A stretch of DNA of 64,000 nucleotides, from positions 1-64,000 of IMG/VR virus record IMGVR_UViG_3300032334_001259; one strand, 5' to 3'. The notes beneath the pieces were generated by a model that had not been told where the DNA came from, did not search any database, and saw only the letters and a list, made by a program, of their open reading frames with translations. A program made the position numbers and the translations under genes. Every line of letters begins with the position of its first letter. The stretch's first letter is position 1. Of this stretch, positions 40,372-54,123 are shown one piece after another.

Positions 40372-41081
40372 TTTTCGTAATTACTTCTAGGATAACGTTC
40401 ACGATAGTGACGTTCACCTGGTTGCAAACTACGAGCCAACTCTACATAATCTGGTCCCTTACTATGCAACCAAGCCTCATGGTCAAAACGCCAATGAGGA
40501 TTGGTTGGGTGGCGTGTAAACTGTGTGAAGTTATGATTTAATCTATCTTCTGGATGTGCAATAGGTTCTAACTTGGCAATATAATCGCTTTTTGCCCACC
40601 AGAAATTGCCAGCAAAATGTGGCCACGGAACTGTATTATAATTTGTTCCTACTACTTCTGCACCTTCACGAAGTGCTTCAACATTATCACGCCATTTTTC
40701 AATCGTTGCCCAATTCATAAAATCACGCCAATCACCAACGTTTGGATCACCATAACGTAACAAACCTTTAAGATGAATATAACAAATGTAAAATGGTTCT
40801 GTTGCTTCACGTGCTTGTTGTAACATATACATCAGCGTTGGCCATTCATGATAAGCAGCATCTTTGTTGACACTTGCAAGTTTAAGTTTTCCTGCCGTAT
40901 CATTAATATTTTTTGTTGACAGCCAATTAGTAAAGGTCCAAGGTTGACCATTCATACAAATATGGATTTCATTGGCTGCATCCCATAGTCCTGACTTTTC
41001 AATTAAGTCCCACTGTTGGTCCATTACTTGGTTCCAACCGCCTAGTTCATTTACGTGCCAGAAAATCTTGATCGGTGTCAT
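40368..41081 (-). CDS. putative glycosyltransferase-like protein
   Basis: YIHLKG, WRDFM, FAGNFWWA..YI, RFDHEAW pattern. Confidence 0.45.
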   Translation of the reverse strand: MTPIKIFWHVNELGGWNQVMDQQWDLIEKSGLWDAANEIHICMNGQPWTFTNWLSTKNINDTAGKLKLASVNKDAAYHEWPTLMYMLQQAREATEPFYICYIHLKGLLRYGDPNVGDWRDFMNWATIEKWRDNVEALREGAEVVGTNYNTVPWPHFAGNFWWAKSDYIAKLEPIAHPEDRLNHNFTQFTRHPTNPHWRFDHEAWLHSKGPDYVELARSLQPGERHYRERYPRSNYEN

Positions 41082-41100
41082 GTTATTACCTTGTTGATGT

Positions 41101-41174
41101 TGGTGGAGAATATCAGAGTCGAACTGATGAATCCGCCTTGCAAAGGCGGCGGTTTTCCACTAGCCTAATTCCCC
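41101..41174 (-). tRNA. tRNA-Ala(UGC), CCA encoded
   Basis: GGGGAAT/ATTCTCC stem with G3:U70; anticodon arm CCGCC-TTTGCAA-GGCGG; T arm ATCAG-TTCGACT-CTGAT; TTGACA promoter at 41213. Confidence 0.95.
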
Positions 41175-41214
41175 ACAGGATAATAATATATATTCATATA
41201 TTATACTTGTCAAT

Positions 41215-41264
41215 AAAAAACCTCTGCGTGGCCCATGTTAGTTACACCAGAGGCAGAGGTTTTT
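41215..41264. terminator. inverted repeat / terminator-like hairpin with a large structured loop
   Basis: AAAAACCTCTGC...GCAGAGGTTTTT. Confidence 0.55.
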
Positions 41265-41410
41265 AAAGTAGCCATCATCGGATGATGAGACCAACCCAAC
41301 GAGTTGAATTGGGGGGTTAAGCTAGTTAAAAGATCAATAAAAAACGTATTCCGTTAGTTGGACACACTCTCACAGGAGTGGTTATAGAATAAATTTATAA
41401 ACTGATAATA

Positions 41411-41602
41411 TTATTTAACACTTTTTATTACGTCAATCAATAAACTTTTAAATTCTTCTTTTGCAGGTAAGAAAACCTCTTCACGAATTTGATTGCGATG
41501 TCTATAATTACTATACTTTTCTTCTTCCCACATATCATCCTGTGCATCAATCATCTTTTCCATAGCAATTAACATTTTTTCTAATAATTCGTCTGTTGTC
41601 AT
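41411..41602 (-). CDS. hypothetical protein
   Basis: 63 aa, SD GAGG. Confidence 0.6.
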   Translation of the reverse strand: MTTDELLEKMLIAMEKMIDAQDDMWEEEKYSNYRHRNQIREEVFLPAKEEFKSLLIDVIKSVK

Positions 41603-41609
41603 TTTATCC

Positions 41610-42341
41610 TCATAATGATAAGAAACTTTGTGAACGGTCTATCCATTCTAATACTAAATCTTTTTCGTCAAAATTATCAATACCATTTAGTTTAGCATCT
41701 AAACAATAGGGAAGTCTATTTGTTTCTTTTAATTCATATAAACTATTATACATACGTGGTTCATCATCTGTTTTATATACAGCAGCACGTAACCAACCAT
41801 TTTGTTTATCCAATTGAAAATGTGCATCACGACAATCAAAACCAGCACTTGCTAATTGAACAATAAGACTGCTCATAGTGTAAACATGATACATACCGCT
41901 TGTCATATTAACATTAATTGTATTGTGTTGAATATGTTCACTTATGGAAAGTGAATATGGAATTTCAACTATTAATAATCCATCTTTTCGTAACAATTTA
42001 TGCCAATGAAATAGTGTTCCAACTGGGTCCATTGCATGATGTAATACATTGTGACACCATATAAGGTCTTGTGGTGATAGTTCAACTGTTGCAAAATCTT
42101 CAAATATCCATTTCATACCTTGTACTGTTTGTAAGTTGTATGGTGGTGCTATTTCCACAGCAGTTACATTAAAATTATACTTGCGTCCTTCTGGACTTGT
42201 TAGTGATGCCCACCATACAGCATCATAACCCATACCAGCACCCATTACACAAATATTATCTAATCCCATAAGATAATCTTCTAAAATAGACAAATAATTT
42301 AATGTTACAAGACTATGGGCATGGCTTTCTTGAGGTGTCAT
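41610..42341 (-). CDS. class I SAM-dependent methyltransferase-like protein
   Basis: VMGAGMGYD motif I, DLIWCHNVLHH, LLRKDGLL. Confidence 0.7.
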   Translation of the reverse strand: MTPQESHAHSLVTLNYLSILEDYLMGLDNICVMGAGMGYDAVWWASLTSPEGRKYNFNVTAVEIAPPYNLQTVQGMKWIFEDFATVELSPQDLIWCHNVLHHAMDPVGTLFHWHKLLRKDGLLIVEIPYSLSISEHIQHNTINVNMTSGMYHVYTMSSLIVQLASAGFDCRDAHFQLDKQNGWLRAAVYKTDDEPRMYNSLYELKETNRLPYCLDAKLNGIDNFDEKDLVLEWIDRSQSFLSL

Positions 42342-42393
42342 AAGGTGTCCGTTAAATATTGCTATAGATTATATAGTAGGATATTATTCGGTT

Positions 42394-43191
42394 ATGAAAA
42401 TTTTAATCACAGGAAGCAACGGGTTTATTGGCAGTTATTTGTGCAAATATTATACCGAATATGGTCATCAAGTTATACAATTACATCGTGGTGTTTGTGA
42501 TTTAGAAGATGCTGAAAGTGTTAAAAATTTCTTTACTGCAAATCCATGTAACGCAGTAATTCATACTGCATTATGGGGTCGTGAATTAGTTCGCAGTGAT
42601 AATCCAGAAGTATATGAACGAAACTGGAAAATTTGGCAAAATCTATTAAGTAATCGTGATAAGTTTCAACAATTTATTAATCTTGGAACTGGCTTGGAGT
42701 ATGATAGTGGACGAGACATCAAATATGCTGATGAAGATGATGCCTTATATGTGGAGCCTACTGCTCCTTATGATCGTGTTAAAAACGATATATCTCGTGC
42801 TATTCATAATCTACCATCTTTTTATACACTTCTTTTATTCGGAGTAGCACATTATACAGAAGGTAATCGTTTCTTTAATCGTTTGCTGAATGAACCAACA
42901 TTTACAATCAATGAAGATCGTGAATATGATTATTTTAATTTAGAAGATTTACCAACCGTAATAGATTTAATTTTAGATAATAAAATGCAACATAAAGCAA
43001 TAAACTGTGTTTATGAGCAGAAATATAAATTAAGTCAACTTGCAAAATTATTCTGTGATATTAAAATGCTTGATTATAAAAAAGTGCAAGTATTAGACAC
43101 TAGTAATAAAAATTATACTGGAAGCAATGACAGATTAAAAAGTTATAATCTGCCACTACTTGGTTTAGAATTAGCCATGCTTCGGTTTTAA
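42394..43191 (+). CDS. NAD-dependent epimerase/reductase (extended SDR)
   Basis: ITGSNGFIG, YxxxK (YDRVK). Confidence 0.8.
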   Translation: MKILITGSNGFIGSYLCKYYTEYGHQVIQLHRGVCDLEDAESVKNFFTANPCNAVIHTALWGRELVRSDNPEVYERNWKIWQNLLSNRDKFQQFINLGTGLEYDSGRDIKYADEDDALYVEPTAPYDRVKNDISRAIHNLPSFYTLLLFGVAHYTEGNRFFNRLLNEPTFTINEDREYDYFNLEDLPTVIDLILDNKMQHKAINCVYEQKYKLSQLAKLFCDIKMLDYKKVQVLDTSNKNYTGSNDRLKSYNLPLLGLELAMLRF

Positions 43192-44178
43192 TTTACCGTT
43201 TTCATCAAACAAGATTTCAGCAAAACGTTTCTTGCATGATTCACCATTCCATGCTTGTTGCATTTTAGCAACCTGTTCAACACCAATTTCAATTGCTTGC
43301 TTAAAACTTGTTTGTGGATATTGTGGAATATACTGTTGAATGTGACGGAAAGCATGGTCACCACTGCATAACATTGGTCTACCAACCATAAGTGCTTGGT
43401 CAGTTGCACTACTGATACCAGTTGTATTACGAGCATAGAAAAATACGTTAAGTGTATTCTGTGACAACCATTCTAATAATTCTTGATCACTAAAATAATT
43501 TTCAGTAAGTTGTATTTCAATGCCAGGTTTTGCAATAGGTAAACACTGTGTAGCAACTTCCATACGAGCATAACCGCCAACATCACCATAGTAACTACCA
43601 GGTGCATAGTTCATACGAATGATTGCACGATCAAATTCTTCATTAACTGCACGAACAAGATTACCCAGATTTCTACCGTGACCAGCTAAACCATAAGTTC
43701 CAATAACTGGTATTTCTTTTTCTACATATGGCTGAACTTTTGCTGTGCCAAGTGGACGTGGGAAAGCATAGAAACGCTTGTCATGAAAATCAGCGGTTGG
43801 GTCTACCCAAAAATAAGCATCAAAATCATCAATGTTTACACCTTCTAAACCAGCATATGGATTGTTTGGAAATCCTTCAAAATGAAAGCAGAACTTCATA
43901 CCTGGCAAGTTCTTACAAATCATTTCACTACGCACACCGCTTTGGTCACGCATAGTGGAAATATGATAGTTAAAGAAATATGCATCATATGGTTCTTTCT
44001 CTTTACCACGATGAATAACTTTGCCATTATTAAGTGCGGATATATCTAAATCATTTGTTTCAAAATAATCCATAGTATAATTTGCACCGTCTTTAAGAAC
44101 ATTATGCAACATTCTACCAATAGTGCTCATACTACAAGCACCACGATCTTTGTTTATAAGTGCAAATTTATAGGTCAT
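43171..44178 (-). CDS. GT-B-like putative glycosyltransferase, paralog 1
   Basis: PVIG..G...EFD.AIIR...W.SQNT.N.FFY...DQA...RP shared with 44175 and 46118. Confidence 0.55.
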   Translation of the reverse strand: MTYKFALINKDRGACSMSTIGRMLHNVLKDGANYTMDYFETNDLDISALNNGKVIHRGKEKEPYDAYFFNYHISTMRDQSGVRSEMICKNLPGMKFCFHFEGFPNNPYAGLEGVNIDDFDAYFWVDPTADFHDKRFYAFPRPLGTAKVQPYVEKEIPVIGTYGLAGHGRNLGNLVRAVNEEFDRAIIRMNYAPGSYYGDVGGYARMEVATQCLPIAKPGIEIQLTENYFSDQELLEWLSQNTLNVFFYARNTTGISSATDQALMVGRPMLCSGDHAFRHIQQYIPQYPQTSFKQAIEIGVEQVAKMQQAWNGESCKKRFAEILFDENGKLKPKHG

Positions 44179-45155
44179 AACCCAATCCTTTTGAATATTT
44201 TAGTAAAGTCTTCATGTATCTGTTCTGGTGTAAATCTTTTGTAAACTGGTTCCCATGATTTAGTTCCGTTTGCTATAATTTGTTTCAATGATGAATTTTC
44301 AACAATAATAGTTGGTTCTAAATTCCAATAACTCTTAAACTGATGGCTTTTAGTAATTGCAATAGGGCGACGAGCAGCAATGGCATAATCAATACTACCA
44401 CTCATGCCAGCACCATCAAGATAATCATAGAAGTAACAATTGACTGTATTTTGTGCAAGCCAATTTACAATACCTTGCTCATCTAACCAATCATTGCTTA
44501 CTTCTACTTTAATACCAGGTTTGGTGATAATAGAATTTACTTGTGCAAGAATTTGTGGACCATATGTATTTTTTGGTTGTGTAAAGAAACCATCTGGCAT
44601 GTGCAGTCGTATAATAGCTTCATCGAATTCATGTTGAACTTGTGCTGCTATTCTATGAACGCCCTTCCATGGTGCTGGAAATCCTTGCCACCCAATTACA
44701 GGAATACCTTGTTCAACATATTCTACTGTTGGTGTTTTTGCAGGTAAATGATTTACAACAAATACACCTTCATTATGTGGAACGCTTTCATCGTATGTCA
44801 TCATATATTGCCATATAGGATGCGTATATGGATTCCATTGTTCAGCAAATTGTTTGGCTTGATCATAAACAATACAAATACACTTAATATCTGGATATAA
44901 TCCACGTAGACTCATTTTTTCAATCCACGGATTTACACCTTTATGAAAATTAAAAATAACTAAATTTGGTTTGTAATCTAATATCTTTTTGCTACACTCA
45001 TCAATACTGTCAGTATAAATTGTCTCAATTTTATAAAGTGGATGTGTATCTAAAATATTTGCTAATAGCGAACCAGTTAAACTAACACCACATCTACCAC
45101 GATCATTTTCATCAGTAATTGGTGTAGTAACATATAATATCTTTGCGTTATTCAT
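44175..45155 (-). CDS. GT-B-like putative glycosyltransferase, paralog 2
   Basis: Same C-terminal motif set. Confidence 0.55.
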   Translation of the reverse strand: MNNAKILYVTTPITDENDRGRCGVSLTGSLLANILDTHPLYKIETIYTDSIDECSKKILDYKPNLVIFNFHKGVNPWIEKMSLRGLYPDIKCICIVYDQAKQFAEQWNPYTHPIWQYMMTYDESVPHNEGVFVVNHLPAKTPTVEYVEQGIPVIGWQGFPAPWKGVHRIAAQVQHEFDEAIIRLHMPDGFFTQPKNTYGPQILAQVNSIITKPGIKVEVSNDWLDEQGIVNWLAQNTVNCYFYDYLDGAGMSGSIDYAIAARRPIAITKSHQFKSYWNLEPTIIVENSSLKQIIANGTKSWEPVYKRFTPEQIHEDFTKIFKRIGL

Positions 45156-46116
45156 TTGCTTTTTTTACCTGTTCTGCAATCCAGTGATATGTTTTGCTTA
45201 AGCCACCGTATAAATCTTGGGTAGGAACCCAACCAAGTTTTTCACGAATTAAATCATTATTGCTATTACGACCACGAACACCCTGTGGTCCTTCAATATG
45301 TTTAATTGTTATTGTTTTATCAGCAATACCACTTACGGTTAATACAAGATCGTTGATACTAATAAGATAATCACTACCAATGTTGATTGGACCTTCAAAG
45401 TCACTATCCATTAAACGCATAATGCCTTCTACACAATCATCAATATGTAGAAAACTACGAGTTTGTTTACCATCACCCCATACTTCAATCTCGCCGCCTT
45501 CTTCTGCCTCTGCAATTTTGCGGCAAATAGCAGCTGGTGCTTTCTCTTTGCCACCTTGCCAAGTGCCGTATTCACCAAATATATTATGAAAACGTGCTAT
45601 ACGATTACGCATACCATGTTGACGATTGTAGGCAAGATAAAGACGTTCACTAAACAATTTTTCCCAACCATATTCGCTATCTGGATGAGCAGGATAAGCA
45701 GTATGTTCACGGCAATCTGGATTTTCTGGGTCTAATTGGTTAAATTCGTTGTAAATACAAGCACTACTACTAAAAAATACTTGTTCTACGCCATGACGAT
45801 GTGCGGCTTCAACAACATTTAGATTAATTTTAGCACTGTTAGTCATAACTTCTGCATCATTAATACCAGCATTGATATAACCAGCACCACCCATGTCAGC
45901 AGCAAGCTGAAATACACGGTCAACTTTACGACCAATGATAAAATTAACGACGTTTGGATTGCGACAATCACTGATGTAGAACTCATCACATGCACTTGAT
46001 GCAAATTCTGGTTGTTTTAAATCAACACCACGAACCCAATATCCATCAGTCTTTAAACGTTTGGCAACATGACTACCAATAAATCCACCTGCACCTACTA
46101 CAACTGCCGTTTTCAT
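45148..46116 (-). CDS. GDP-mannose 3,5-epimerase-like SDR
   Basis: GAGGFIG, LAADMGG.G.I, SSACIY, YGWEK, GGKEKAPAA.CRK, GVRGRNS. Confidence 0.85.
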   Translation of the reverse strand: MKTAVVVGAGGFIGSHVAKRLKTDGYWVRGVDLKQPEFASSACDEFYISDCRNPNVVNFIIGRKVDRVFQLAADMGGAGYINAGINDAEVMTNSAKINLNVVEAAHRHGVEQVFFSSSACIYNEFNQLDPENPDCREHTAYPAHPDSEYGWEKLFSERLYLAYNRQHGMRNRIARFHNIFGEYGTWQGGKEKAPAAICRKIAEAEEGGEIEVWGDGKQTRSFLHIDDCVEGIMRLMDSDFEGPINIGSDYLISINDLVLTVSGIADKTITIKHIEGPQGVRGRNSNNDLIREKLGWVPTQDLYGGLSKTYHWIAEQVKKANE

Positions 46117-46117
46117 T

Positions 46118-47095
46118 TTATTCCTCACCGTCAAATATAATTTCTGTTAATCTTTGGATACAACGTTCTTTGCTCCAATCTTCTTGTAATTTTCTCACAT
46201 AATCAACACCATTCTCAATTGTTTCACGTAAACTCATTTCTGGATATGGTTTTTGGTATTGTAAAACATGACGGAATGTAGGGTTGTTACTTACAGCAAT
46301 AGGACGACCACTTGCAATTGCTTGGTCAGGTGCAGCCGCAATGCCTAAAATATGACGTTGATAGAAGAAAGCATTTACGGTATTACGACTGCACCAATCT
46401 ATAAGTTCATCGTTGCTGTAGAAATTATGTGTTATTTGTAATTCAACATTGTCACGTGCTGCGGCACGACATTGTTGAAGAACTTGATTTAATAGTGATT
46501 TGTTTTGGTCACTATATGCTGCTTGTGGAAGATTAATACGCACTATAGATTTTTCAAATTCTTCACTTGCTGCCTTGACAATAAGGTCAAATCCTTTATC
46601 TACTGTTACATAACCATAACAACCAATGACGGGAACTTCTGGGACATATTTGTAACCTGGTAGAATTTTAGGTAATACACGTGGATAATGATGAAACCGT
46701 GGATTTCCAAAATTTTTAGTTGGATCTAATACAATATAACCATTAAAACTATCTGGAACATTGTCTACAACTGGATTAGCATCATCACGTATTTCTTCAA
46801 CAACCATGCAATAATGTAAACTTGGAATTTTGTAAAACTGTGTACAGTCAATACGTTCCATTTCACGCATTGTATAAGGATGGTAATTCCATATAATTAT
46901 ATCGTATTGTGGTGGTTGTTGACCATCAATAAGTTTGATTATTCCATTATTCAAGGCATTGCGATCAAGAAAGTTTGCTTCTACATAATCCATATGCCAT
47001 TGGTCAGAGTCTTCATTGATTTCGTAAAAAGTTAAACCTTTTTCATAAATGGAACAATTTGCTTCACGTGTGTTAACGAATAAAAATCTATACAT
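46118..47095 (-). CDS. GT-B-like putative glycosyltransferase, paralog 3
   Basis: Same C-terminal motif set. Confidence 0.55.
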   Translation of the reverse strand: MYRFLFVNTREANCSIYEKGLTFYEINEDSDQWHMDYVEANFLDRNALNNGIIKLIDGQQPPQYDIIIWNYHPYTMREMERIDCTQFYKIPSLHYCMVVEEIRDDANPVVDNVPDSFNGYIVLDPTKNFGNPRFHHYPRVLPKILPGYKYVPEVPVIGCYGYVTVDKGFDLIVKAASEEFEKSIVRINLPQAAYSDQNKSLLNQVLQQCRAAARDNVELQITHNFYSNDELIDWCSRNTVNAFFYQRHILGIAAAPDQAIASGRPIAVSNNPTFRHVLQYQKPYPEMSLRETIENGVDYVRKLQEDWSKERCIQRLTEIIFDGEE

Positions 47096-47098
47096 ATT

Positions 47099-48028
47099 TT
47101 ATTTTTCTATATGGTAACCGCTTGTTTGTTTATTGTTCTTGATATCATCAATTGCACGTTCAATAATACGAACAGCAGGACTTGCAAATGTTGTATTACT
47201 AAAGCGGAAATCTGCGGCAATGTCAAGACCATATGGCAACAAATCTTCTGGCTTATGACTAAAGTTTACAAATACTTTATTCTTATCAAGCAAGTTTTGT
47301 TTAGTATTGGCATAAGTGAATGGTCCACTATTCTTACCAACTATAAGATTTACTTTTGTTGAAAGAAGAGAAATATCACAAAGATCACATGAAGTTGTAA
47401 ACAAATCACTTGTGAAAATGACATTTTGACATTTTGTTTCAAATCTTTCAGTAGCAACAATTGTATCATCTTTGTGATTGTCAGCAACATATTCAATAAT
47501 ACTTTTCATATTATCCATGCTGCTTTGCTTACTTGCTACTTCACTGTTACAGAAAAGATAAACATTTCCTACCAATTCTTTTTGCATTTGTGCAGTAGGT
47601 TCATGATAATGACTATAATTAATTTCTGGAACATAATCCCAAACATCTTCACTTAATTGCAAATCAATGCCAAAGTTTTGACGAATATTGCCATACATTT
47701 CACGGTAAATGCGATGGTGACTAATATAACTTGGGTGAGTGTTTGGCCAAAGACCCATGTAACTACCTACCCAAGTGTTGATTAGTATAGTATCATCATC
47801 ATTTGCAAATCGTTTCCACTGGTCAACACTTGTTAGCACACTTTCGCAATCTTCACTATCAAGTGTTTCTACAAGATCAATAATTGCACGTGGGTTTTTG
47901 CGGTGTGCATAATGAAATGTATAATCTGGTAGTTGGCGTTTAATGTCAGCGACCACTCCTCGTGTAGAGAAGAGGTCGCCATAATGCCAGTGATTATAGA
48001 ATATAATATTACCCATGTTATTATCCAA
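47099..48028 (-). CDS. hypothetical protein, possible GT-B (GT9-like) transferase
   Basis: HYGDL near the N-terminus, VGKNSGP; inside the sugar operon. Confidence 0.4.
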   Translation of the reverse strand: MDNNMGNIIFYNHWHYGDLFSTRGVVADIKRQLPDYTFHYAHRKNPRAIIDLVETLDSEDCESVLTSVDQWKRFANDDDTILINTWVGSYMGLWPNTHPSYISHHRIYREMYGNIRQNFGIDLQLSEDVWDYVPEINYSHYHEPTAQMQKELVGNVYLFCNSEVASKQSSMDNMKSIIEYVADNHKDDTIVATERFETKCQNVIFTSDLFTTSCDLCDISLLSTKVNLIVGKNSGPFTYANTKQNLLDKNKVFVNFSHKPEDLLPYGLDIAADFRFSNTTFASPAVRIIERAIDDIKNNKQTSGYHIEK

Positions 48029-49244
48029 TAACTTGGAATGTTGGGCAAGGAACTACTAACTTACCGCCCTTGGCGATAAAGTCCTGTTCACGCTTGACGA
48101 ACTCATCAATAAAGTGCCAAGGAAGAACAAGCAAGTAATCTGGATTTGCTGCTCTCATTTCTTCTTCACTGCAAATTGGAATATTAGTTCCAACTGTTAA
48201 CAAACCAAACTTATATGGACTACGTTCAGCAATAGCAGTTACAAGGTCAGGGGTGATACCAAACAATTGCAACAGTGTGTTACCCTTTGTTGATGCACCA
48301 TAACCATAAACCTTCTTACCTTCTGCCTTTGCTTGATGTAAGAAATCAAGAACTTGCTTTTTAAGTGACCAGATATTTTCACCAAATTCTTTCCAAAGGT
48401 CTTCATCAGTGATATTCCACCAAGCATTTTCATATTGTATGGTAGCGGCAATACGCATTTCACAAACGTCACGAATCTGGCGTGTAGCAAATGTCTTTTC
48501 ATCAGCAGTATCTTTTTGGAATGTTACACGGAATGAACCACCGTTAGCGTCATTAAGTGTGCAATCACGAAGAACGAATCCTTCACTTTCAAACAACTTC
48601 TTGATGCTGTTCAAATCGTAATAATACACGTGTTCATGGCAAATGTTATCAAATGCCAACTGCTTCAACATAAGTGGTGTATAACTCATTTGTAGAACAA
48701 ATACACCATCATCTGTGAGAATATCATGTGCATCACGAATAAATGGACGTGGGTTATCAAGGTCATAGAACATTGCAATGCAAGTAATAACCTTTGCCTT
48801 TGCATCTGGTCCAAGACCAAGGCGGTTCCAAGCATCCTTTGTAAAGAAGTCTTGAATTACTTTTGCATGTTTGGTGCTTTCTGCCAAGAAACTATCATCA
48901 GCAGGATCAATACCAACCTTTGTCATGTAATCAGGAACTTGACGAAGCAATGTGCCATCATTACATGCAATATCAAGCCAGATATCACCACTTTGTGTCT
49001 TGGTGCGGCTTGTAATTTCTGCAACAACATCACCAAGAAGTTTAGTCATGGTTGCATTGGTTCCACTGCGATACCAATATTGTCCATACATCTTGTCCAA
49101 TGGTGCAACACCATCAAGACGGACTGCACCAATAGTTTGGTCAAGATAAAGATCAAGCGACCAAGGTTTTGTTTCACGCATTTCTGCGCCTGGCTTCATA
49201 AAATCACTTACGTAGTGATCACCTAATTCTAAAATCTTTTTCAT
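48021..49244 (-). CDS. NDP-hexose 3-C-methyltransferase (TcaB9/NovU-like)
   Basis: YWYRSG, DIACNDGTLL, FDNICHEH, NGGS, YGASTKGNTLL, PDYLLVLPWHF. Confidence 0.88.
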   Translation of the reverse strand: MKKILELGDHYVSDFMKPGAEMRETKPWSLDLYLDQTIGAVRLDGVAPLDKMYGQYWYRSGTNATMTKLLGDVVAEITSRTKTQSGDIWLDIACNDGTLLRQVPDYMTKVGIDPADDSFLAESTKHAKVIQDFFTKDAWNRLGLGPDAKAKVITCIAMFYDLDNPRPFIRDAHDILTDDGVFVLQMSYTPLMLKQLAFDNICHEHVYYYDLNSIKKLFESEGFVLRDCTLNDANGGSFRVTFQKDTADEKTFATRQIRDVCEMRIAATIQYENAWWNITDEDLWKEFGENIWSLKKQVLDFLHQAKAEGKKVYGYGASTKGNTLLQLFGITPDLVTAIAERSPYKFGLLTVGTNIPICSEEEMRAANPDYLLVLPWHFIDEFVKREQDFIAKGGKLVVPCPTFQVIG

Positions 49245-49663
49245 TTTAATCCCTCGTTGATATATGATTTTGTTTCTACAATATCGCTATTGTATAGTTT
49301 GTTGATATCTAATTTGTATTGGCAACGGTCTTTGTTACCTTGGTGGACATCAGTGACTAACTTGATAAATTCACTGTCATATGGTTTCAAATCGGAACCA
49401 TATGTTCTTACAACGTCTTCATGTCGCCAAATCATATGATTTACTGCTTTAAGATTCTTGACAATATCATCAACTGGCTCACTTGGCTGTTCAAGATCAT
49501 TAATAATCTTCATAAGTTCTGCCAATTCTTTGTTGACATATTCAATCTTAATGCGATTAGTTTCGTTATCTACCTTACCATATTCTTCTAACTTAATGTT
49601 AAGAATAGTAATCTTATCCCACAAATCGCCAATGCTAATTGGTGCAAATACTAACTGTCCCAT
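49241..49663 (-). CDS. DUF6165-like protein
   Basis: PISIGDLWDKITILNIK...W..ED...R...K..IN...ETKSY. Confidence 0.7.
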   Translation of the reverse strand: MGQLVFAPISIGDLWDKITILNIKLEEYGKVDNETNRIKIEYVNKELAELMKIINDLEQPSEPVDDIVKNLKAVNHMIWRHEDVVRTYGSDLKPYDSEFIKLVTDVHQGNKDRCQYKLDINKLYNSDIVETKSYINEGLK

Positions 49664-49665
49664 GA

Positions 49666-50685
49666 TTAACCCCTCGAAGCCAATTTGTGATCTGTTTCAC
49701 ACATATCGTTTACAAGGTCTTGTAGGGTAAATTCTGGTTGCCAACCAAGAACTTCACGAACCTTTGTTGCATCACCTTGGATGTTTACAACATCAACTGG
49801 ACGATAGAACTCTGGGTTAACCTTAATCATAACTTGTCCAGTTGCCTTGTTACGTGCAACTTCGTCAACGCCTTCACCTTCCCATACAAGTTCAATGTTG
49901 AAATAATTTGCTGTAAGATTACAAAAATCACGGATGCTGCTTTGAATACCAGTAGCAACTACATAATCATCTGGCTTGTCGTGTTGCAACATCATCCACA
50001 TACCACGAACATAATCCTTGGCATGACCCCAATCACGAAGACTGTTCATATTACCAAGTTCAAGAACCTTCTGCTTACCTAATACCATGTTAGCAAATGC
50101 TTTTGTAATCTTACGAGTTACAAAGAGTTCACCACGGCGTGGACTTTCATGGTTGAATAGAAGACCATTACAACCAAAAATCTTATAACTTTCACGATAG
50201 TTTACAGTAATCCAATAAGCATATAGTTTAGCAGCACTATATGGTGAGCCAGGATAGAATGGTGTATCTTCTTTTTGTGGATTATACTTTTGAATACCAA
50301 ACATTTCACTGGTTGATGCTTGATAGAACTTAACATCATCAATCATCTTGAGACTACGGATACTATCAAGGATACGCAATGGTCCAAGAGCATTTGTATC
50401 ACCAGTAAGTTCTGGCATTTCAAAACTTACCTTAACATGGCTTTGTGCCGCAAGGTTATAAATTTCTGTTGGACGAACATTGTCAATAAGGTTACGGATG
50501 CTATTTGCATCACTTAAGTCACCATTATGAAACTTGACTCGATCCTTTACATCTTGAATATTTGGGTGGTCAAAGTTTGCGCTACGGCGAATAAGACCAT
50601 GGACTTCGTAGCCCTTGTCAAGTAGCAATTCTGCCAAATAGCTACCATCTTGACCTGCGATGCCCGTAATAAGTGCTCTTTTCAT
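49666..50685 (-). CDS. gmd: GDP-mannose 4,6-dehydratase
   Basis: ITGIAGQDGSYL, NLAAQSHV, QASTSE, SPYSAAK, FNHESPRRGE.FVTRK, RDWGHA. Confidence 0.95.
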   Translation of the reverse strand: MKRALITGIAGQDGSYLAELLLDKGYEVHGLIRRSANFDHPNIQDVKDRVKFHNGDLSDANSIRNLIDNVRPTEIYNLAAQSHVKVSFEMPELTGDTNALGPLRILDSIRSLKMIDDVKFYQASTSEMFGIQKYNPQKEDTPFYPGSPYSAAKLYAYWITVNYRESYKIFGCNGLLFNHESPRRGELFVTRKITKAFANMVLGKQKVLELGNMNSLRDWGHAKDYVRGMWMMLQHDKPDDYVVATGIQSSIRDFCNLTANYFNIELVWEGEGVDEVARNKATGQVMIKVNPEFYRPVDVVNIQGDATKVREVLGWQPEFTLQDLVNDMCETDHKLASRG

Positions 50686-50736
50686 TGATAATTCCTTTGA
50701 TATTGTATATATTGTTGATAATATACGGACATAAAT

Positions 50737-51198
50737 TTATGCTACCGTAAAATCTTCCATTCCTGCTGTCTTAAGTCGGACCATGTGACCCAACATAAAA
50801 TTCTTACTTTCCAGTGCTTTCATTACACCTAACCAACGGTTACGTAACAGTGCAACCTCGTTAATAATGGTTTCATAATCAATAACTTCTTCTTCGCCAT
50901 CTACATATTTTTCAGCATCACGACTTGTTAATGCACGAGCATAATGTTCCAGATATTTTTGGAAATGCTTTCTACGAATTTTACGTAATTGGATATTAAG
51001 AAAGTTAAGCACTGCTTCTATTTCTTGTAGTTGATTAAAACGATATGCTGTTATACCAGGTAGTGCACTCATATTTTTTTCTACAATACCATTAATATTA
51101 ATATCACGTTGTGCTAAATTAAATTCAGCTTCGTAATATGCAATAAAGTCTGGTATTAATCCTATGTTTTGACTTACCTTGGTATACCAATTGCTCAT
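50737..51198 (-). CDS. uvsY: recombination mediator UvsY-like
   Basis: Helical protein, EKYVDG, C-terminal L..AGME; next to uvsX. Confidence 0.75.
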   Translation of the reverse strand: MSNWYTKVSQNIGLIPDFIAYYEAEFNLAQRDININGIVEKNMSALPGITAYRFNQLQEIEAVLNFLNIQLRKIRRKHFQKYLEHYARALTSRDAEKYVDGEEEVIDYETIINEVALLRNRWLGVMKALESKNFMLGHMVRLKTAGMEDFTVA

Positions 51199-51416
51199 TC
51201 ATCAAAATCTTCGTCAGATTCCTCTATTTCAATATGTTCTGAAATTGCATTTTCCATAATTCTATCAACAGAAAGTGCATTTAGATCACTATCGCTTATA
51301 CCTAAATCAACCAATTCATTAATAACGTGGTCTGCTGCCATTTGGCGATCTTTTGCTGGAATATATTCCTTGATAGTTTGCCAAAATTGGACAAGTAAAT
51401 CACTTGTATCACTCAT
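51195..51416 (-). CDS. hypothetical acidic protein
   Basis: Start set at MSDTSD, overlapping the uvsX end. Confidence 0.6.
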   Translation of the reverse strand: MSDTSDLLVQFWQTIKEYIPAKDRQMAADHVINELVDLGISDSDLNALSVDRIMENAISEHIEIEESDEDFDE

Positions 51417-52455
51417 CAGTAGTTTCCTCTTTATTTTTTGGAGTATGCTTACTATACTCACTCATAATTATATCAAGTTGTTCATTAGTAAAGTTCTTCC
51501 TAAACTCCTTGATAATTTCTCCTGTCACAGGACTTGTATAAGCAAGGCGATTGCCATCTTTAACTAAAATTCCTTCATCTTCAAACATTTCAATAAGACC
51601 ACTATATGGACTCATACCAGTTTCGTATGGAATTTTAACCTGTACAGATTCAAATGGTTTGGCATAACGTGTTTTCATAATTTTACATGCGGCACGAATA
51701 CCATTAACTTCACTTGTCTTATTGCCATCTTCATCTTCTTTTAGTTTCAATTTACGCATTGCCACAACAATAGATGATGCATAGATAAAACCTTGACCAC
51801 CACTGATCTTATCATCTGGGTCAAACATATCTTGCGAAGCATATGTATGGTTAGTTGCGACCATACCAATATTATAACTACCAAACATGTTTACACAATT
51901 ACGAACAAGTGCGGTCAACGCCTTTGGTTTACGACCCATATCACCCTTTAAATCACCTGCTTCAAACTGATTAATATCAGTTGGAGTAAGCAACATACCA
52001 AGTGAGTCAAGAACAAATAGAACTTTTGGACGAGATTCTTCTGGCATTGCCTTGTAATGGTCCATAAAATTTGTAATAGTTTTGGCAACATCATCAATCA
52101 TTGCCATATTAAGTTTAAGAAGATGATCTTCGTCTGTCCTAACACCAAGTGCCTTGAGCCAATCCTCATCGAGTGCATTTTCTGTATCAATAAGAATTAC
52201 ATAAATTCCTTGATCTTGTGCATTTTTAACAACGTTTCCGCTGCAAATATAACTTTTACCTGCACCACTTTCACCAGCAAATACAGTTACTTTACCAAGT
52301 GGAATACCTTTATTAAAATCACCACTAATACGATAATTTAATGTGTAATTGCCTGTTGAAACCCAATCAGTTGGATCATTGTAACCAACACTCATGCCTG
52401 GAATTGCTTTAGTCAGGTCTTTTCTAAATTTTGAAATGTCAAATGGTTTAGCCAT
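51409..52455 (-). CDS. uvsX: RecA-like recombinase UvsX
   Basis: GESGAGKS, IDTE.A, VLDSLG, TNHTY, GGQG, KTR; start set at MAKPFD. Confidence 0.93.
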   Translation of the reverse strand: MAKPFDISKFRKDLTKAIPGMSVGYNDPTDWVSTGNYTLNYRISGDFNKGIPLGKVTVFAGESGAGKSYICSGNVVKNAQDQGIYVILIDTENALDEDWLKALGVRTDEDHLLKLNMAMIDDVAKTITNFMDHYKAMPEESRPKVLFVLDSLGMLLTPTDINQFEAGDLKGDMGRKPKALTALVRNCVNMFGSYNIGMVATNHTYASQDMFDPDDKISGGQGFIYASSIVVAMRKLKLKEDEDGNKTSEVNGIRAACKIMKTRYAKPFESVQVKIPYETGMSPYSGLIEMFEDEGILVKDGNRLAYTSPVTGEIIKEFRKNFTNEQLDIIMSEYSKHTPKNKEETTDE

Positions 52456-52486
52456 AATTATGCCTTTGTTGAAAAAATAATATAAT

Positions 52487-52521
52487 ATGTGGGCAGACTT
52501 GTCAATAAATCCGCCCACATT
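52487..52521 (-). terminator. hairpin after gp32 whose loop carries the TTGACA of the uvsX promoter
   Basis: ATGTGGGCGGATT-ta-TTGAC-AAGTCTGCCCACAT followed by an AT-rich tail. Confidence 0.6.
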
Positions 52522-52529
52522 TATTGTAA

Positions 52530-53531
52530 TTATTCTGCTGTTTTACGATTGCGAATCATGCTCAAGATTTCAGCTGCACGAGCATTGCTATCACCTTTTG
52601 GTGCAGTGCTTACAGGAGTAGATGCTACTTGAGATTCTTCATCCCAAGGTGCTGTATCTTCCTTAACACTTGCTACCTGTGGACGAGCAGTTGGTGCATT
52701 ACGAGTTACTGTAGTGGAATCTTCTGCATCAGCAGCATCACCACGCAAGCCAGCAGGCTTGTAATACTGTCCCCAACGTGCTTCATCATAAGTGGCACCA
52801 TCAACGCTTGCCTCAAACATTTCTTTAATAATCTTGAGTTCTGCGTCACCAGGTTTCTTTGGAAGGAAACTCTTCAAATCATAAAGACCAAATGCATCAA
52901 TTGCTGCATTTTCTGCTTGAGTCAAAGCACTTTCCTTACGTGCCCACTTGCTGGTAGCATAATCTGCATACTGACCCTTGCTCGTTTTAGTGATACTGAA
53001 ATCCAAACCACGTTCAAAATCTGTTGGGATTTCTTCAATATCAGGGTCTTTCAATGCAGCAATGATCAACGGATATATGCTGGGGCTAATAACGAACCGA
53101 CGAATTGGATTTTCGGGTACGCTGTCTTCTGCAAGTGGATTGTCACGGACAAATCCTTGGAAGATATAAGAACGCTTCTTCCAATACTTACGACCCATTT
53201 CTTCAAGACTCTTGTCCTTGAACCAAGTACGAACTTCTGTAAGAATTGGGCATGTTTCATTATACATTTCCACACAAGGAACCTGAACAATAACTGGTTT
53301 ACTGTTCATCTGACCCTTAACTCCGCTAAATGGGAGACGAATCATTGCACGTTCAACCCAGAAAAAATCATTCTTTGTGTCGCCATCAGGCAAGAACCTG
53401 ACACGTGCCGTTGCATTTTCTGGAATGTCCCAATGTGGATAGATTGCGTTATCACGACCGCCGCCGCTATTACCGCTACTGCGGTTTTCTTGTTGTGCAA
53501 GTTTTGCACGGATTTCTGCCAATGAAGCCAT
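52530..53531 (-). CDS. single-stranded DNA-binding protein (gp32-like)
   Basis: RFLPD, CP, YWKKRSY, G.DF..K...YADY..S; acidic tail; TATAAATA upstream. Confidence 0.9.
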   Translation of the reverse strand: MASLAEIRAKLAQQENRSSGNSGGGRDNAIYPHWDIPENATARVRFLPDGDTKNDFFWVERAMIRLPFSGVKGQMNSKPVIVQVPCVEMYNETCPILTEVRTWFKDKSLEEMGRKYWKKRSYIFQGFVRDNPLAEDSVPENPIRRFVISPSIYPLIIAALKDPDIEEIPTDFERGLDFSITKTSKGQYADYATSKWARKESALTQAENAAIDAFGLYDLKSFLPKKPGDAELKIIKEMFEASVDGATYDEARWGQYYKPAGLRGDAADAEDSTTVTRNAPTARPQVASVKEDTAPWDEESQVASTPVSTAPKGDSNARAAEILSMIRNRKTAE

Positions 53532-53900: not shown

Positions 53901-54123
53901 TATGGACTGTAGCCTTTATTTTTTCTAATGTTAGTATAGCATCATAAAGATGTTCTATGATATTGCCCGCAAATCCGCCAGTGTTTACACCCTGTTGCAT
54001 AAGATTTTTTGCCTCTGCACGAAGTTCACCAAGGAGATTAATCACATCATCTATGCTTGCATTACTTGTCAATCTTGTTGTTTCTTGTAATCCAGCAAGT
54101 CTTTTAATATCTTCTACACTCAT
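53893..54123 (-). CDS. small putative internal head protein
   Basis: ATGA-coupled start MSVEDIKRLAGLQE. Confidence 0.6.
   Translation of the reverse strand: MSVEDIKRLAGLQETTRLTSNASIDDVINLLGELRAEAKNLMQQGVNTGGFAGNIIEHLYDAILTLEKIKATVHNG

What the first reader, a model, noticed from the sequence alone, without database searches (positions are those of the whole stretch)
42394..50685. GDP-sugar cluster predicting a branched 3-C-methyl 6-deoxyhexose plus several novel transferases
Seen: gmd, DUF6165-like, 3-C-methyltransferase (lacking the usual N-terminal CxxC), a GT-like ORF, a GDP-mannose 3,5-epimerase-like gene and three GT-B-like paralogs in one operon, with a convergent SDR. Known: Gmd yields GDP-4-keto-6-deoxymannose, the type of substrate used by C3-methyltransferases and reductases (virenose/evalose-type sugars). 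GME yields GDP-L-galactose/L-gulose. Inference: the phage builds a rare glycan for virion glycosylation, DNA hypermodification or host-surface conversion.
Basis: partly seen in the sequence, partly recalled or inferred. Interest (0 to 1): 0.62.

Follow-up and report, generated by a model that had tools for sequence, protein, structure and literature searches.

The report
Phage gene set for branched sugar
A 338-kb freshwater jumbo phage carries a tight operon that most likely turns host GDP-mannose into a rare 3-C-methyl-6-deoxy sugar (plus L-galactose-type sugars) and attaches them with four soluble glycosyltransferases to a target that the sequence does not reveal; this extends the known phage sugar clusters, and its core recurs in dozens of uncultured phages.

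Summary
On the minus strand, 43171-50685, lie eight tightly packed genes:
- a true GDP-mannose 4,6-dehydratase
- a DUF6165-like protein
- a TylC3/TcaB9-type sugar C-methyltransferase with no zinc-binding cysteines
- a GT9-like GT-B transferase
- a GDP-mannose 3,5-epimerase with its catalytic residues intact
- three paralogous GT4-like GT-B transferases

A convergent RmlD-like SDR follows, and just outside the coordinates a conserved methyltransferase.

In 45 of 79 related viral loci, gmd, DUF6165, the Zn-less C-MT and the GT9-like gene are collinear. The extra transferases, epimerase and SDR vary. In distant phages an aminotransferase replaces the C-MT.

The GT4-like family, the C-MT subfamily and DUF4254/6165 also form a cassette in many bacteria and archaea, inside Wzm/Wzt polysaccharide loci. 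The GT9-like family looks virus-restricted.

The phage has no lipid-carrier priming enzyme or exporter. It also lacks any hydroxymethylase, TET or C5-methylase needed for known DNA glycosylation.

The sugar pathway is well supported by homology and synteny. The acceptor is unresolved: virion protein about 0.4, host envelope glycan about 0.35, DNA 0.05 or less.

This is a new variant of a known kind, of moderate interest.

The parts
49666..50685 (-). [quoted passage not shown]
   Evidence: TIGR01472 scores 484.7 bits against a cut-off of 415; PF16363 6e-137.
49241..49663 (-). DUF6165/DUF4254-like small helical protein (140 aa), function unknown
   Evidence: PF19662 scores 26.6 bits against a cut-off of 27. 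Atlas clusters are DUF6165/DUF4254 and mostly viral. Across 22 homologues it has 8 invariant positions, 6 of them polar (K17, W79, E82, R113, N121, K132). It is present in 55 of 77 viral orf309 loci and 67 of 79 cellular cassette loci.
48021..49244 (-). Sugar C-methyltransferase of the TylC3/TcaB9 family without the N-terminal zinc domain (407 aa)
   Evidence: Methyltransf_14 2.2e-45 and Methyltransf_23, with no Methyltransf_13. PDB 4rv9 6e-42, TcaB9 8e-36. All 54 viral orthologues lack CxxC pairs. It is 39% identical (2e-93) to the Zn-bearing C-MT of the bacterial cassette.
47099..48016 (-). GT9-like GT-B glycosyltransferase (305 aa from the ATG at 48016; the ORF opens at a TTG at 48028)
   Evidence: No Pfam, NCBIfam or PHROG hit. 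Model pLDDT 92.6. VIA-align: 3tov Z 15.3, WaaF 14.6, WaaC 13.9, TibC 12.8. 158 relatives in viral contigs. None found in species genomes. Atlas clusters are 98-100% viral.
46118..47095 (-). GT4-like GT-B paralog 1 (325 aa)
   Evidence: BLASTP 1.8e-75 to 43171-44178; aligned in A1.
45148..46116 (-). GDP-mannose 3,5-epimerase homologue (322 aa from the ATG at 46116; the ORF opens at a TTG at 46134)
   Evidence: PDB 2c59 1.4e-99 over residues 11-326. The residues aligned to Cys145, Tyr174, Lys178 and Lys217 are conserved. The start was checked.
44175..45155 (-). GT4-like GT-B paralog 2 (326 aa), the most divergent
   Evidence: BLASTP 6e-25 and 7e-20 to the other two paralogs.
43171..44178 (-). 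GT4-like GT-B paralog 3 (335 aa), last gene of the operon
   Evidence: Model pLDDT 90.1. Foldseek: SenB 1.3e-9, then OtsA, VldE, SdgB. 171 relatives in bacterial and archaeal genomes.
42394..43191 (+). Convergent short SDR (265 aa), candidate 4-ketoreductase
   Evidence: PF01370 9.4e-19; RmlD_sub_bind 41 bits against a cut-off of 27. GSNGFIG and YDRVK motifs are visible in the translation. Present in 13 of 24 full-length related loci.
41610..42341 (-). Class I SAM methyltransferase (243 aa), divergent from the SDR; candidate sugar O-methyltransferase
   Evidence: Methyltransf_23 34.9 bits. Conserved next to the SDR at 59-80% identity in related loci. No solved relative.

Best explanation
This is a phage-borne, fully cytoplasmic glycan-building cassette.

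Proposed pathway:
1. Gmd converts host GDP-D-mannose to GDP-4-keto-6-deoxy-D-mannose. The phage has no sugar nucleotidyltransferase of its own.
2. The zinc-less TylC3/TcaB9-type enzyme methylates C-3 with SAM. The phage also encodes a SAM synthetase elsewhere.
3. The convergent RmlD-like SDR reduces C-4. The product is a GDP-6-deoxy-3-C-methylhexose of the evalose/virenose type.
4. The GME homologue supplies GDP-L-galactose/L-gulose from GDP-mannose, or 5-epimerises the branched sugar.
5. The virus-restricted GT9-like transferase, the only transferase in the conserved core, places the first sugar on the acceptor.
6. The one to three GT4-like paralogs extend the chain. Their family extends Wzm/Wzt-type polysaccharides in cells.
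7. The neighbouring methyltransferase may O-methylate the glycan.

Shown here: gene identities, folds, catalytic motifs, conserved synteny and the variable periphery.
Inferred: the substrates, the order of steps, the stereochemistry and above all the acceptor.

My leaning for the acceptor is a virion protein (about 0.4) over a host lipid-linked envelope glycan (about 0.35).
For: Gene identities:
- gmd scores above the equivalog cut-off.
- The C-MT aligns end to end with solved sugar 3-C-methyltransferases, including the HEH stretch that aligns to TcaB9's DEH.
- GME scores 1.4e-99 with its catalytic residues aligned.
- The SDR has the RmlD substrate-binding domain.
- GT-B folds were modelled at pLDDT 90-93.

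Synteny in viruses:
- gmd, DUF, C-MT and the GT9-like gene are collinear within 4.5 kb in 45 of 79 viral loci. gmd co-occurs with the GT9-like gene in 63.
- In distant phages a DegT aminotransferase takes the C-MT slot, still next to gmd, DUF and the GT9-like gene. The slot therefore holds an enzyme that works on the 4-keto product of Gmd.

Synteny in cells:
- 66 of 79 loci found through the GT4-like protein alone carry this C-MT subfamily within 3 kb. Most also carry DUF4254, an SDR and often a 44-57% identical gmd-like gene.

Cytoplasmic and not self-exporting:
- No cluster protein has a transmembrane segment.
- The genome has no Bac_transf and no NTP_transferase.
- The genome's only large polytopic membrane proteins are SSF and TctA transporters.

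Leaning towards a phage-specific acceptor:
- The GT9-like family has no relative in 185,579 species genomes by motif scan.
- Its Atlas clusters are 98-100% viral.
- Its best BFVD match is a giant-virus protein with TM 0.82.

Other support:
- A SAM synthetase lies at G000:319962-321053.
- A GDP route with gmd plus a TylCIII-like C-MT has been proposed for virenose in Coxiella (PMC3539893).
Against: - No activity was measured. Every solved relative of the C-MT acts on dTDP-sugars, so use of a GDP-sugar is inferred from synteny only.
- The Zn domain present in all solved relatives is missing, and its role in catalysis is not known to me.
- The SDR is present in only 13 of 24 full-length related loci, so another reductase must serve elsewhere, or the 4-keto sugar is handled differently.
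- GME is present in only 10 of 24, and its place in the pathway is a guess.
- The cellular relatives of the GT4-like proteins work in lipid-linked Wzm/Wzt pathways. GT9 enzymes are classically LPS-core transferases. Both facts favour the rival, host-envelope reading.
- No acceptor protein was identified.
- The motif scan behind 'virus-restricted' is insensitive to divergent relatives.
Confidence: 0.6

Rival explanations
1. Host-envelope remodelling. The soluble phage enzymes feed a new GDP-sugar into the host's own lipid-linked pathway, either the LPS core or a Wzm/Wzt-type O-polysaccharide. The GT9-like enzyme and the GT4-like enzymes cap or rebuild the surface glycan of the infected cell. 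This would block superinfection, or stop progeny being lost on debris, during the long latent period of a jumbo phage.
For: - The GT4-like family, the C-MT subfamily and DUF4254 form a cassette inside cellular loci rich in GT2, ABC_tran, ABC2_membrane and Wzt_C.
- The closest solved folds of the core transferase include the LPS heptosyltransferases WaaF and WaaC.
- The number of extension transferases varies from 0 to 3 among close relatives, as in serotype-like diversification.
- Cyanophage sugar clusters have been interpreted this way (PMC12801897).
- The same genome carries other envelope genes, a CsgG and a curlin-repeat protein.
- Lack of transmembrane segments is normal for peripheral LPS transferases.
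Against: - The phage brings no priming transferase, flippase, Wzm/Wzt or ligase, so it would depend wholly on a compatible host pathway.
- The GT9-like family was not found in any cellular genome, and a relative sits in a giant virus of eukaryotes, which have no LPS.
- The host is unknown.
Confidence: 0.3
2. DNA hypermodification. The transferases glycosylate modified bases in phage DNA, as in T-even phages and the 5mYOX/ThyS-associated systems.
For: - The cluster lies among replication and recombination genes: a RecA/UvsX-like gene at 51409-52518, a gp32-like gene at 52530-53531 and a helicase at 36630-38072. It does so in distant phages too.
- Phage DNA glycosyltransferases include GT-B enzymes, and their glycans can be diverse (10.1101/2023.12.21.572611).
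Against: - The genome has no Tet_JBP and no C5 DNA methylase.
- Its only thymidylate-synthase homologue passes the equivalog cut-off for true ThyA (335.2 against 327) and sits next to a DHFR.
- T4 beta-GT does not appear among the top 50 fold matches of either model.
- All four transferases are acidic, pI 5.1-6.2.
- Known DNA glycosylation uses mostly UDP-sugars (PMC13326640).
Confidence: 0.05
3. The methyltransferase does not make a C-branched sugar. Having lost the zinc domain, it might methylate another position or another molecule. The cluster would then yield ordinary GDP-6-deoxyhexoses (D-rhamnose or 6-deoxytalose type) plus L-galactose, with methyl groups added later.
For: - The defining N-terminal zinc domain is absent in all 54 viral orthologues.
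- No NCBIfam equivalog matches.
- All solved relatives use dTDP-sugars.
Against: - It aligns over the full length with 3-C-methyltransferases, including the Methyltransf_14 domain that is specific to sugar C-methyltransferases.
- It is 39% identical to the Zn-bearing enzyme of the cellular cassette.
- Its slot between gmd and the transferase is strictly conserved.
Confidence: 0.1

Closest known systems
Proposed GDP route to virenose (6-deoxy-3-C-methylgulose) in Coxiella burnetii: Gmd CBU_0689, TylCIII-like CBU_0691, GMER CBU_0688 (PMC3539893)
   Same: It has the same logic: GDP-mannose, then Gmd, then a TylCIII-type C-3 methyltransferase, then an SDR reductase/epimerase. The enzymes sit in one locus with transferases.
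   Different: - The Coxiella route is itself only predicted.
- The phage enzyme lacks the zinc domain.
- The phage uses a short RmlD-like SDR and a GME homologue rather than a GMER.
- The phage has no O-antigen export genes.
- The context is a lytic-type jumbo phage.
Solved sugar 3-C-methyltransferases: the D-mycarose 3-C-methyltransferase 4rv9, TcaB9, and the 5t64 enzyme
   Same: Full-length alignment (6e-42 to 3e-34), a SAM-binding Rossmann domain, the C-terminal Methyltransf_14 domain and the aligned E-H pair.
   Different: - It has no N-terminal four-cysteine zinc site.
- It is genetically coupled to gmd rather than to dTDP-glucose 4,6-dehydratase.
Sugar and glycosyltransferase clusters of large aquatic myoviruses (cyanophages P-SSM2, S-SCSM1, S-SCSM2R; metagenome-assembled Synechococcus phage DSL-LC02)
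   Same: - These are large clusters of nucleotide-sugar enzymes and many transferases in lytic aquatic myoviruses, with an unknown target.
- DSL-LC02 has gmd, a 34% identical C-MT, fcl and then several transferases.
- GME-like genes at 55-59% identity occur in 39 cyanophage and marine-virus records.
   Different: - None of the 50,697 phage records holds the GT9-like gene, apart from three uncultured huge phages.
- The DUF6165 and Zn-less C-MT core was not discussed in any paper my searches found.
ABC-transporter-dependent (Wzm/Wzt) glycan assembly from a GDP-6-deoxyhexose, such as the Pseudomonas aeruginosa common polysaccharide antigen with gmd, rmd and three GT4 rhamnosyltransferases (from my own knowledge, not tested here)
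   Same: - gmd plus a 4-reductase plus three soluble GT4-like paralogs plus methyltransferases.
- The cellular relatives of the phage cassette sit next to ABC_tran, ABC2_membrane and Wzt_C genes.
   Different: - The phage has no Wzm/Wzt and no priming enzyme.
- No sequence similarity to named rhamnosyltransferase families was detected.
Virus-encoded virion glycosylation: chlorovirus and mimivirus glycan machineries (PMC9614988) and mycobacteriophage capsid and tail-tube O-glycosylation (Freeman et al. 2023, as cited in PMC12619734)
   Same: The virus encodes its own cytoplasmic nucleotide-sugar enzymes (PBCV-1 has gmd) and soluble transferases, independent of lipid carriers.
   Different: - No virion data exist for this phage.
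- The giant-virus glycan review contains no mention of C-methyl sugars, L-galactose or GT9.

Membership tests
GDP-mannose 4,6-dehydratase (TIGR01472) | Score above the curated equivalog cut-off over the full length | tested here: met
   484.7 bits against 415, residues 2-334.
GDP-mannose 3,5-epimerase | Close full-length similarity to solved GME, well separated from other SDR sugar enzymes | tested here: met
   336.8 bits to 2c59 against 93 bits for the next family, UDP-glucuronate decarboxylase.
GDP-mannose 3,5-epimerase | Catalytic Cys145 and Lys217 (epimerisation acid/base) and Tyr174/Lys178 of the SDR triad. The residue roles come from my own knowledge of the Arabidopsis enzyme. | tested here: met
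   In the alignment, SSACIY, YGxEK and EKAPAA are all conserved in the query.
GDP-mannose 3,5-epimerase | Converts GDP-D-mannose to GDP-L-galactose/L-gulose | not testable with these tools
   This needs an enzyme assay.
NDP-sugar 3-C-methyltransferase (TylC3/TcaB9 type) | SAM-binding domain plus the C-terminal Methyltransf_14 domain | tested here: met
   PF13489 2.9e-15 and PF08484 2.2e-45.
NDP-sugar 3-C-methyltransferase (TylC3/TcaB9 type) | N-terminal four-cysteine zinc-binding domain (Methyltransf_13) | tested here: not met
   - No PF08421 hit.
- The alignment starts at TcaB9 residue 24, and the second Cys pair is replaced.
- There are no cysteines in the N-terminus of any of 54 orthologues.
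- A second C-MT in the same genome does have the domain.
NDP-sugar 3-C-methyltransferase (TylC3/TcaB9 type) | Active-site Glu-His pair next to the sugar C-3. The role is from my own knowledge of TcaB9. | tested here: met
   The query's CHEHV aligns with TcaB9's YDEHF and the 4rv9 enzyme's YHEHL.
NDP-sugar 3-C-methyltransferase (TylC3/TcaB9 type) | Methylates C-3 of an NDP-4-keto-6-deoxyhexose | not testable with these tools
   Only synteny with gmd supports it.
Glycosyltransferase family 9 (47099-48016) | Sequence membership (PF01075 above its cut-off) | tested here: not met
   No Pfam or NCBIfam hit at E of 0.01 or better. One Atlas neighbour cluster carries PF01075.
Glycosyltransferase family 9 (47099-48016) | GT-B fold closest to heptosyltransferases | tested here: met
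   3tov Z 15.3, 1psw 14.6, 2h1f 13.9 and 4rap 12.8, against about 10-11 for other GT-B enzymes.
Glycosyltransferase family 4 / retaining GT-B (three paralogs) | Sequence membership (Glycos_transf_1 and related models) | tested here: not met
   No Pfam hit for any paralog.
Glycosyltransferase family 4 / retaining GT-B (three paralogs) | GT-B fold | tested here: met
   The top 50 listed Foldseek matches are GT-B enzymes. The best are SenB, OtsA, VldE, SdgB and TreT.
DUF6165 (PF19662) | Score above the gathering cut-off | tested here: inconclusive
   26.6 bits against 27. The orthologue in L096 is on record as PF19662. Atlas neighbours are DUF6165/DUF4254.
Phage DNA glycosylation systems (T-even type, 5mYOX- or ThyS-associated) | An enzyme that makes the hydroxymethyl or hydroxy pyrimidine acceptor (hydroxymethylase, or C5-MT plus TET/JBP) | tested here: not met
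   - PF12851 and PF00145 are absent from the complete 338-kb genome.
- The single ThyA homologue passes the true thymidylate synthase equivalog and is paired with DHFR.
Self-contained surface polysaccharide locus (Wzm/Wzt or Wzx/Wzy) | Priming phosphoglycosyltransferase and an export or polymerase membrane protein | tested here: not met
   - No Bac_transf.
- No transmembrane segments in the cluster.
- The polytopic proteins elsewhere in the genome are SSF and TctA transporters.
- PF00953 (WecA type) was not searched.

The most novel reading that the evidence does not exclude
A virus-restricted module of DUF6165 plus a GT9-like transferase primes phage virion proteins with a C-branched 6-deoxy sugar. 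The sugar is made by a zinc-less, GDP-specific clade of C-3 methyltransferases. DUF6165/DUF4254 would be a previously unrecognised enzyme or specificity factor of 4-keto-6-deoxyhexose pathways, shared by phages, bacteria and archaea. As far as my searches show, this would be the first branched-chain sugar reported on a virus particle, and it would define a widespread, swappable phage glyco-cassette in which the C-methyltransferase and an aminotransferase are interchangeable.
Probability: 0.2. Interest if true: 0.75.

Novelty: new variant of a known kind. Interest (0 to 1): 0.55.

Why it matters
Large aquatic phages often carry sugar and glycosyltransferase clusters whose purpose nobody has shown.

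This locus offers a compact, conserved core of four genes: gmd, DUF6165, a Zn-less C-methyltransferase and a GT9-like transferase. It recurs in dozens of uncultured freshwater phages, and its chemistry can be tested directly with four recombinant proteins.

If the pathway is right:
- It would add a GDP-dependent, zinc-free clade to the sugar C-methyltransferases, enzymes of interest for glyco-diversification of natural products.
- It would give a first functional handle on DUF6165/DUF4254.
- It would link a phage module to an unannotated cassette in Wzm/Wzt polysaccharide loci of many bacterial and archaeal phyla.

Finding the acceptor would show whether such phages glycosylate their own particles or re-dress the surface of the host.

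Tried and rejected
- **Near-identity DNA search** of 42000-51000 against 50,697 phage records gave no match.
- **PHROGs, NCBIfam and Pfam** gave nothing for the four transferases.
- **Complex prediction** of the GT9-like protein with DUF6165 scored 0.00 in both runs. The tool's verdict is 'no answer', so it counts neither for nor against binding.
- **Promoter and terminator scans** over 41000-52000 were at chance level: 57 promoter-like sites against 50.5 ± 7.1 expected, and 2 terminator-like sites against 5.5 expected. The T4 late-promoter word TATAAATA is not enriched.
- **Sequencing runs:** 20 listed runs from 12 studies hold at least part of the stretch, nearly all labelled freshwater, lake or pond. 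No RNA run was on record, so expression could not be examined and read laying was not used.
- **PDB profile search with the DUF6165 alignment** gave only coiled-coil noise. There is no solved relative for the 243-aa methyltransferase.
- **SDR comparison:** the phage SDR and the SDR of the cellular cassette show no specific similarity, so they are not orthologues.
- **OmpA-like gene:** one lies next to the cluster in a relative (L096), but it has no counterpart in this genome.
- **Literature:** no paper discusses DUF6165/DUF4254 function, and none describes a phage C-methyl sugar pathway.
- **Not used:** the large representative protein search and the third word search, because family scans, folds and locus scans answered the questions.

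Full report
**Setting.** The window is the first 64 kb of a 338,435-bp virus record with direct terminal repeats, rated complete. Its large terminase is 54% identical to that of Pseudomonas phage PA5oct and about 50% to those of Sinorhizobium phage Phosso and Agrobacterium phage Atu_ph07. It is therefore a jumbo myovirus of that broad group. Near-identical sequence occurs, in part, in runs from 12 studies, nearly all labelled freshwater, lake or pond. No RNA run is on record. The host is unknown.

**The observation.** Eight ORFs on the minus strand run from 50685 down to 43171. They overlap or are separated by 1-4 nt. In transcription order they are:
- **gmd.** TIGR01472 scores 484.7 bits against an equivalog cut-off of 415.
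- **A 140-aa DUF6165-like protein.** It scores 26.6 bits against 27. Atlas neighbours are DUF6165/DUF4254.
- **A 407-aa sugar C-methyltransferase.** It has Methyltransf_23 and Methyltransf_14 but no Methyltransf_13. It aligns from residue 3 to residue 24 of TcaB9 and from residue 13 to residue 34 of the D-mycarose 3-C-methyltransferase 4rv9, at 8e-36 and 6e-42. The second cysteine pair of the zinc site is replaced, and the E-H pair is kept.
- **A 305-aa protein with no family hit.**
- **A 325-aa protein.**
- **A GME homologue.** It scores 1.4e-99 to Arabidopsis GME, far above any other SDR family. The residues aligned to Cys145, Tyr174, Lys178 and Lys217 are conserved.
- **Two more proteins, of 326 and 335 aa.**

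The 325-, 326- and 335-aa proteins are paralogs (1.8e-75, 7e-20 and 6e-25). A 265-aa SDR with an RmlD substrate-binding domain, GxxGxxG and YxxxK converges on the operon. Divergent from the SDR lies a 243-aa class I methyltransferase. Only the position of the epimerase, which lies between the paralogs, and the extra methyltransferase need correcting.

**The unknown proteins are glycosyltransferases.**
- A model of the 335-aa paralog, built from 22 homologues, has pLDDT 90.1. The top 50 listed Foldseek matches are GT-B glycosyltransferases, with SenB, OtsA, VldE and SdgB best.
- A model of the 305-aa protein, built from 32 homologues, has pLDDT 92.6. It matches GT9 enzymes best: 3tov Z 15.3, WaaF 14.6, WaaC 13.9 and the protein heptosyltransferase TibC 12.8. 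Other GT-B families score about 10-11.
- The 305-aa protein has an invariant G13-D14 near the N-terminus and a VGKNSGPF motif. From memory, these recall the catalytic-Asp loop and the DSG nucleotide-sugar motif of GT9. That is a lead, not a test.
- Neither model lists T4 beta-glucosyltransferase among its best 50 matches.

**Conservation in viruses.** The GT9-like protein has 158 relatives in IMG/VR contigs, and 79 loci were fetched.
- gmd (at least 50% identical) accompanies the GT9-like gene in 63 of the 77 loci that hold it over at least half its length.
- The C-MT accompanies it in 54 and DUF6165 in 55. All four occur together in 47, and they are collinear within 4.5 kb in 45.
- All 54 viral C-MT orthologues (57-100% identical) lack the zinc cysteines. 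This is a stable clade, not a truncation artefact.
- Downstream the cluster varies. Among 24 loci with at least 7 kb of downstream sequence, the GT4-like paralogs number 0, 1, 2 or 3 in 7, 7, 7 and 3 loci. GME is present in 10, the SDR in 13 and the methyltransferase in 13.
- In more distant phages the C-MT slot is filled by a DegT-family aminotransferase, sometimes with an fcl-like SDR. It is still followed by a DUF4254/6165 protein and the GT9-like gene, and in one case by a GT10 fucosyltransferase.
- The conserved logic is therefore: gmd, then an enzyme that modifies the 4-keto product, then DUF, then the GT9-like transferase.
- In close relatives the cluster sits at the same place, next to the RecA-like gene. 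In a T4-like contig it sits near gp32 and gp59.
- Among 50,697 GenBank phage records, only three uncultured huge phages hold the GT9-like gene.
- The metagenome-assembled Synechococcus phage DSL-LC02 has an analogous cluster of gmd, a 34% identical C-MT, fcl and several transferases.
- GME-like genes at 55-59% identity are common in cyanomyoviruses, where they are annotated only as generic epimerases.

**A cellular counterpart.** The GT4-like family has no Pfam model, yet it has 171 relatives in one-per-species prokaryote genomes. They span Chitinophagaceae, Pyrinomonadaceae, Abditibacteriota, Oscillatoriales, Planctomycetota, Ignavibacteriota, Anaeromyxobacter and Methanomicrobiales.
- In the 79 best loci, which were chosen by the transferase alone, a sugar C-MT lies within 3 kb in 66.
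- That C-MT is closer to the window's enzyme (36-44% identity) than to the phage's second, Zn-type C-MT (25-30%).
- A DUF4254/6165 protein is present in 67 of the 79 loci and an SDR in 70. A 44-57% identical gmd-like gene occurs in roughly half.
- The Ferruginibacter example reads DUF4254, C-MT (with the Zn domain), GT, Methyltransf_21, SDR. Its C-MT is 39% identical to the phage enzyme over the full length.
- In several cellular loci the transferase is part of an ORF of 1100-1600 residues.
- Among 93 flanking ORFs from 15 loci, the commonest families are GT2 (12), ABC_tran (6), ABC2_membrane (3), Wzt_C (3) and YfhO (3). This is the signature of ABC-transporter-dependent polysaccharide assembly.
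- By contrast, a motif scan of the same genomes found no relative of the GT9-like protein, and its Atlas clusters are 98-100% viral. Its best match among predicted viral structures is a giant-virus (Solumvirus) protein with TM 0.82.

**What the genome lacks.**
- There is no sugar nucleotidyltransferase, so GDP-mannose must come from the host.
- There is no Bac_transf priming enzyme.
- No cluster protein has a transmembrane segment. The genome's large polytopic proteins are SSF and TctA transporters.
- There is no Tet/JBP dioxygenase and no C5 DNA methylase.
- The single thymidylate-synthase homologue passes the true-ThyA equivalog (335.2 against 327) and is adjacent to a DHFR.
- All four transferases are acidic, with pI 5.1-6.2.
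- The known routes to glycosylated DNA need a hydroxymethylase or a C5-MT/5mYOX pair (10.1101/2023.12.21.572611; PMC13326640). The DNA reading is therefore unlikely.

**Most likely mechanism.**
1. Gmd makes GDP-4-keto-6-deoxy-D-mannose.
2. The Zn-less C-MT methylates C-3 with SAM. The phage also encodes MetK.
3. The RmlD-like SDR reduces C-4. The product is a GDP-6-deoxy-3-C-methylhexose.
4. The stereochemistry, evalose-like or virenose-like, cannot be read from sequence.
5. GME either supplies GDP-L-galactose/L-gulose or acts on the branched sugar. In the second case only C-5 could be epimerised, because C-3 would be quaternary. That would give an L-gulo, virenose-type sugar. This is inference.
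6. The GT9-like enzyme is the only transferase of the conserved core, so it should place the first sugar.
7. The GT4-like paralogs extend the chain, and the methyltransferase may O-methylate it.

A comparable GDP route has been proposed, but not proven, for virenose in Coxiella (PMC3539893).

**The acceptor is not settled.**
- For a virion protein: the priming transferase family appears restricted to viruses, including a virus of eukaryotes. The machinery is soluble and independent of lipid carriers. There is precedent in giant viruses and mycobacteriophages (PMC9614988; PMC12619734 citing Freeman et al. 2023).
- For the host envelope: the extension transferases come from Wzm/Wzt polysaccharide loci. 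GT9 enzymes are classically LPS-core enzymes. The periphery varies as serotype-determining loci do. Cyanophage clusters are usually interpreted this way (PMC12801897). This phage also carries CsgG and a curlin-repeat gene.
- My estimates are about 0.4 for a virion protein, 0.35 for a host envelope glycan, 0.05 or less for DNA, and the rest for something else.

**Novelty.** Sugar clusters in large aquatic phages are known, and so are viral gmd genes.

The following were not found in the papers I searched:
- a C-branched sugar pathway in a virus
- the zinc-less, gmd-coupled C-methyltransferase clade
- the DUF6165 plus GT9-like core, apparently virus-restricted
- the link to an unannotated cellular cassette

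I rate it a new variant of a known kind, of moderate interest, and directly testable in vitro.

**Limits.**
- No enzyme, glycan or expression data exist.
- The motif-based genome scan can miss divergent relatives.
- The complex prediction gave no answer.

Noticed in passing
G000:295845-297059 (+), outside the window; L086:3845-5059: A second sugar C-methyltransferase in the same phage, this one with the canonical zinc domain (Methyltransf_13, 23 and 14). It is only 27% identical to the window's enzyme. Its neighbours are unknown proteins of 298, 237 and 450 aa.
   Followed up: partly
G000:311665-313186 (-), outside the window; L087:665-2186: A CsgG curli-secretion channel homologue (PF03783, 4.6e-45) next to a curlin-repeat protein. 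Curli-type export genes are unusual in a phage.
   Followed up: no
G000:304065-307900 (-), outside the window; L086:12065-16043: A 703-aa CHASE2 sensor fused to an adenylate/guanylate cyclase domain, followed by a 625-aa HATPase_c_3 protein.
   Followed up: no
G000:308323-309324 (-), 314383-315417 (+) and 319962-321053 (-), outside the window: A canonical GT4 transferase beside a metallophosphoesterase; an SDR resembling a dTDP-glucose 4,6-dehydratase (242 bits, below the cut-off); and a SAM synthetase. These could form a second sugar locus, and the synthetase could supply SAM for the methyltransferases.
   Followed up: partly
G000:206746-210091 (-), outside the window; L088:2746-6091: A DegT/PseC-like sugar aminotransferase and a 290-aa SDR sit directly beside a canonical thymidylate synthase and a DHFR. 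This is a third sugar-related spot in the genome.
   Followed up: partly
Loci L097-L175 (bacterial and archaeal genomes): A conserved, apparently unannotated cellular cassette of DUF4254, C-methyltransferase, a GT-B with no Pfam model, (Methyltransf_21), an SDR and a 378-aa unknown protein. It spans many phyla, often with the transferase inside proteins of 1100-1600 aa, and sits in Wzm/Wzt-type loci.
   Followed up: partly
Cyanophage records S-SSM7 (GU071098 200680-201663), P-TIM68, Bellamy and 36 others: Genes 55-59% identical to the window's GME homologue are annotated only as 'UDP-glucose 4-epimerase' or 'nucleotide-sugar epimerase'. They are probably GDP-mannose 3,5-epimerases.
   Followed up: no
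window 54120-57362 (-): A 1080-aa, highly charged and acidic protein with no Pfam hit lies between the gp32-like gene and the large terminase, in the stretch with the strongest negative GC and AT skew in the window.
   Followed up: no
window 50737-51198 (-) and 40368-41081 (-): Two conserved flanking genes of unknown function: a 153-aa protein upstream of gmd, 74% identical in a 248-kb relative, and a 237-aa protein whose orthologue is on record as DUF8361.
   Followed up: no
LR756501.1 321331-322545 and 302196-302945 (735-kb uncultured phage): One of the largest known phage genomes carries a 54% identical C-methyltransferase and, 19 kb away, a 31% identical GT9-like gene.
   Followed up: no
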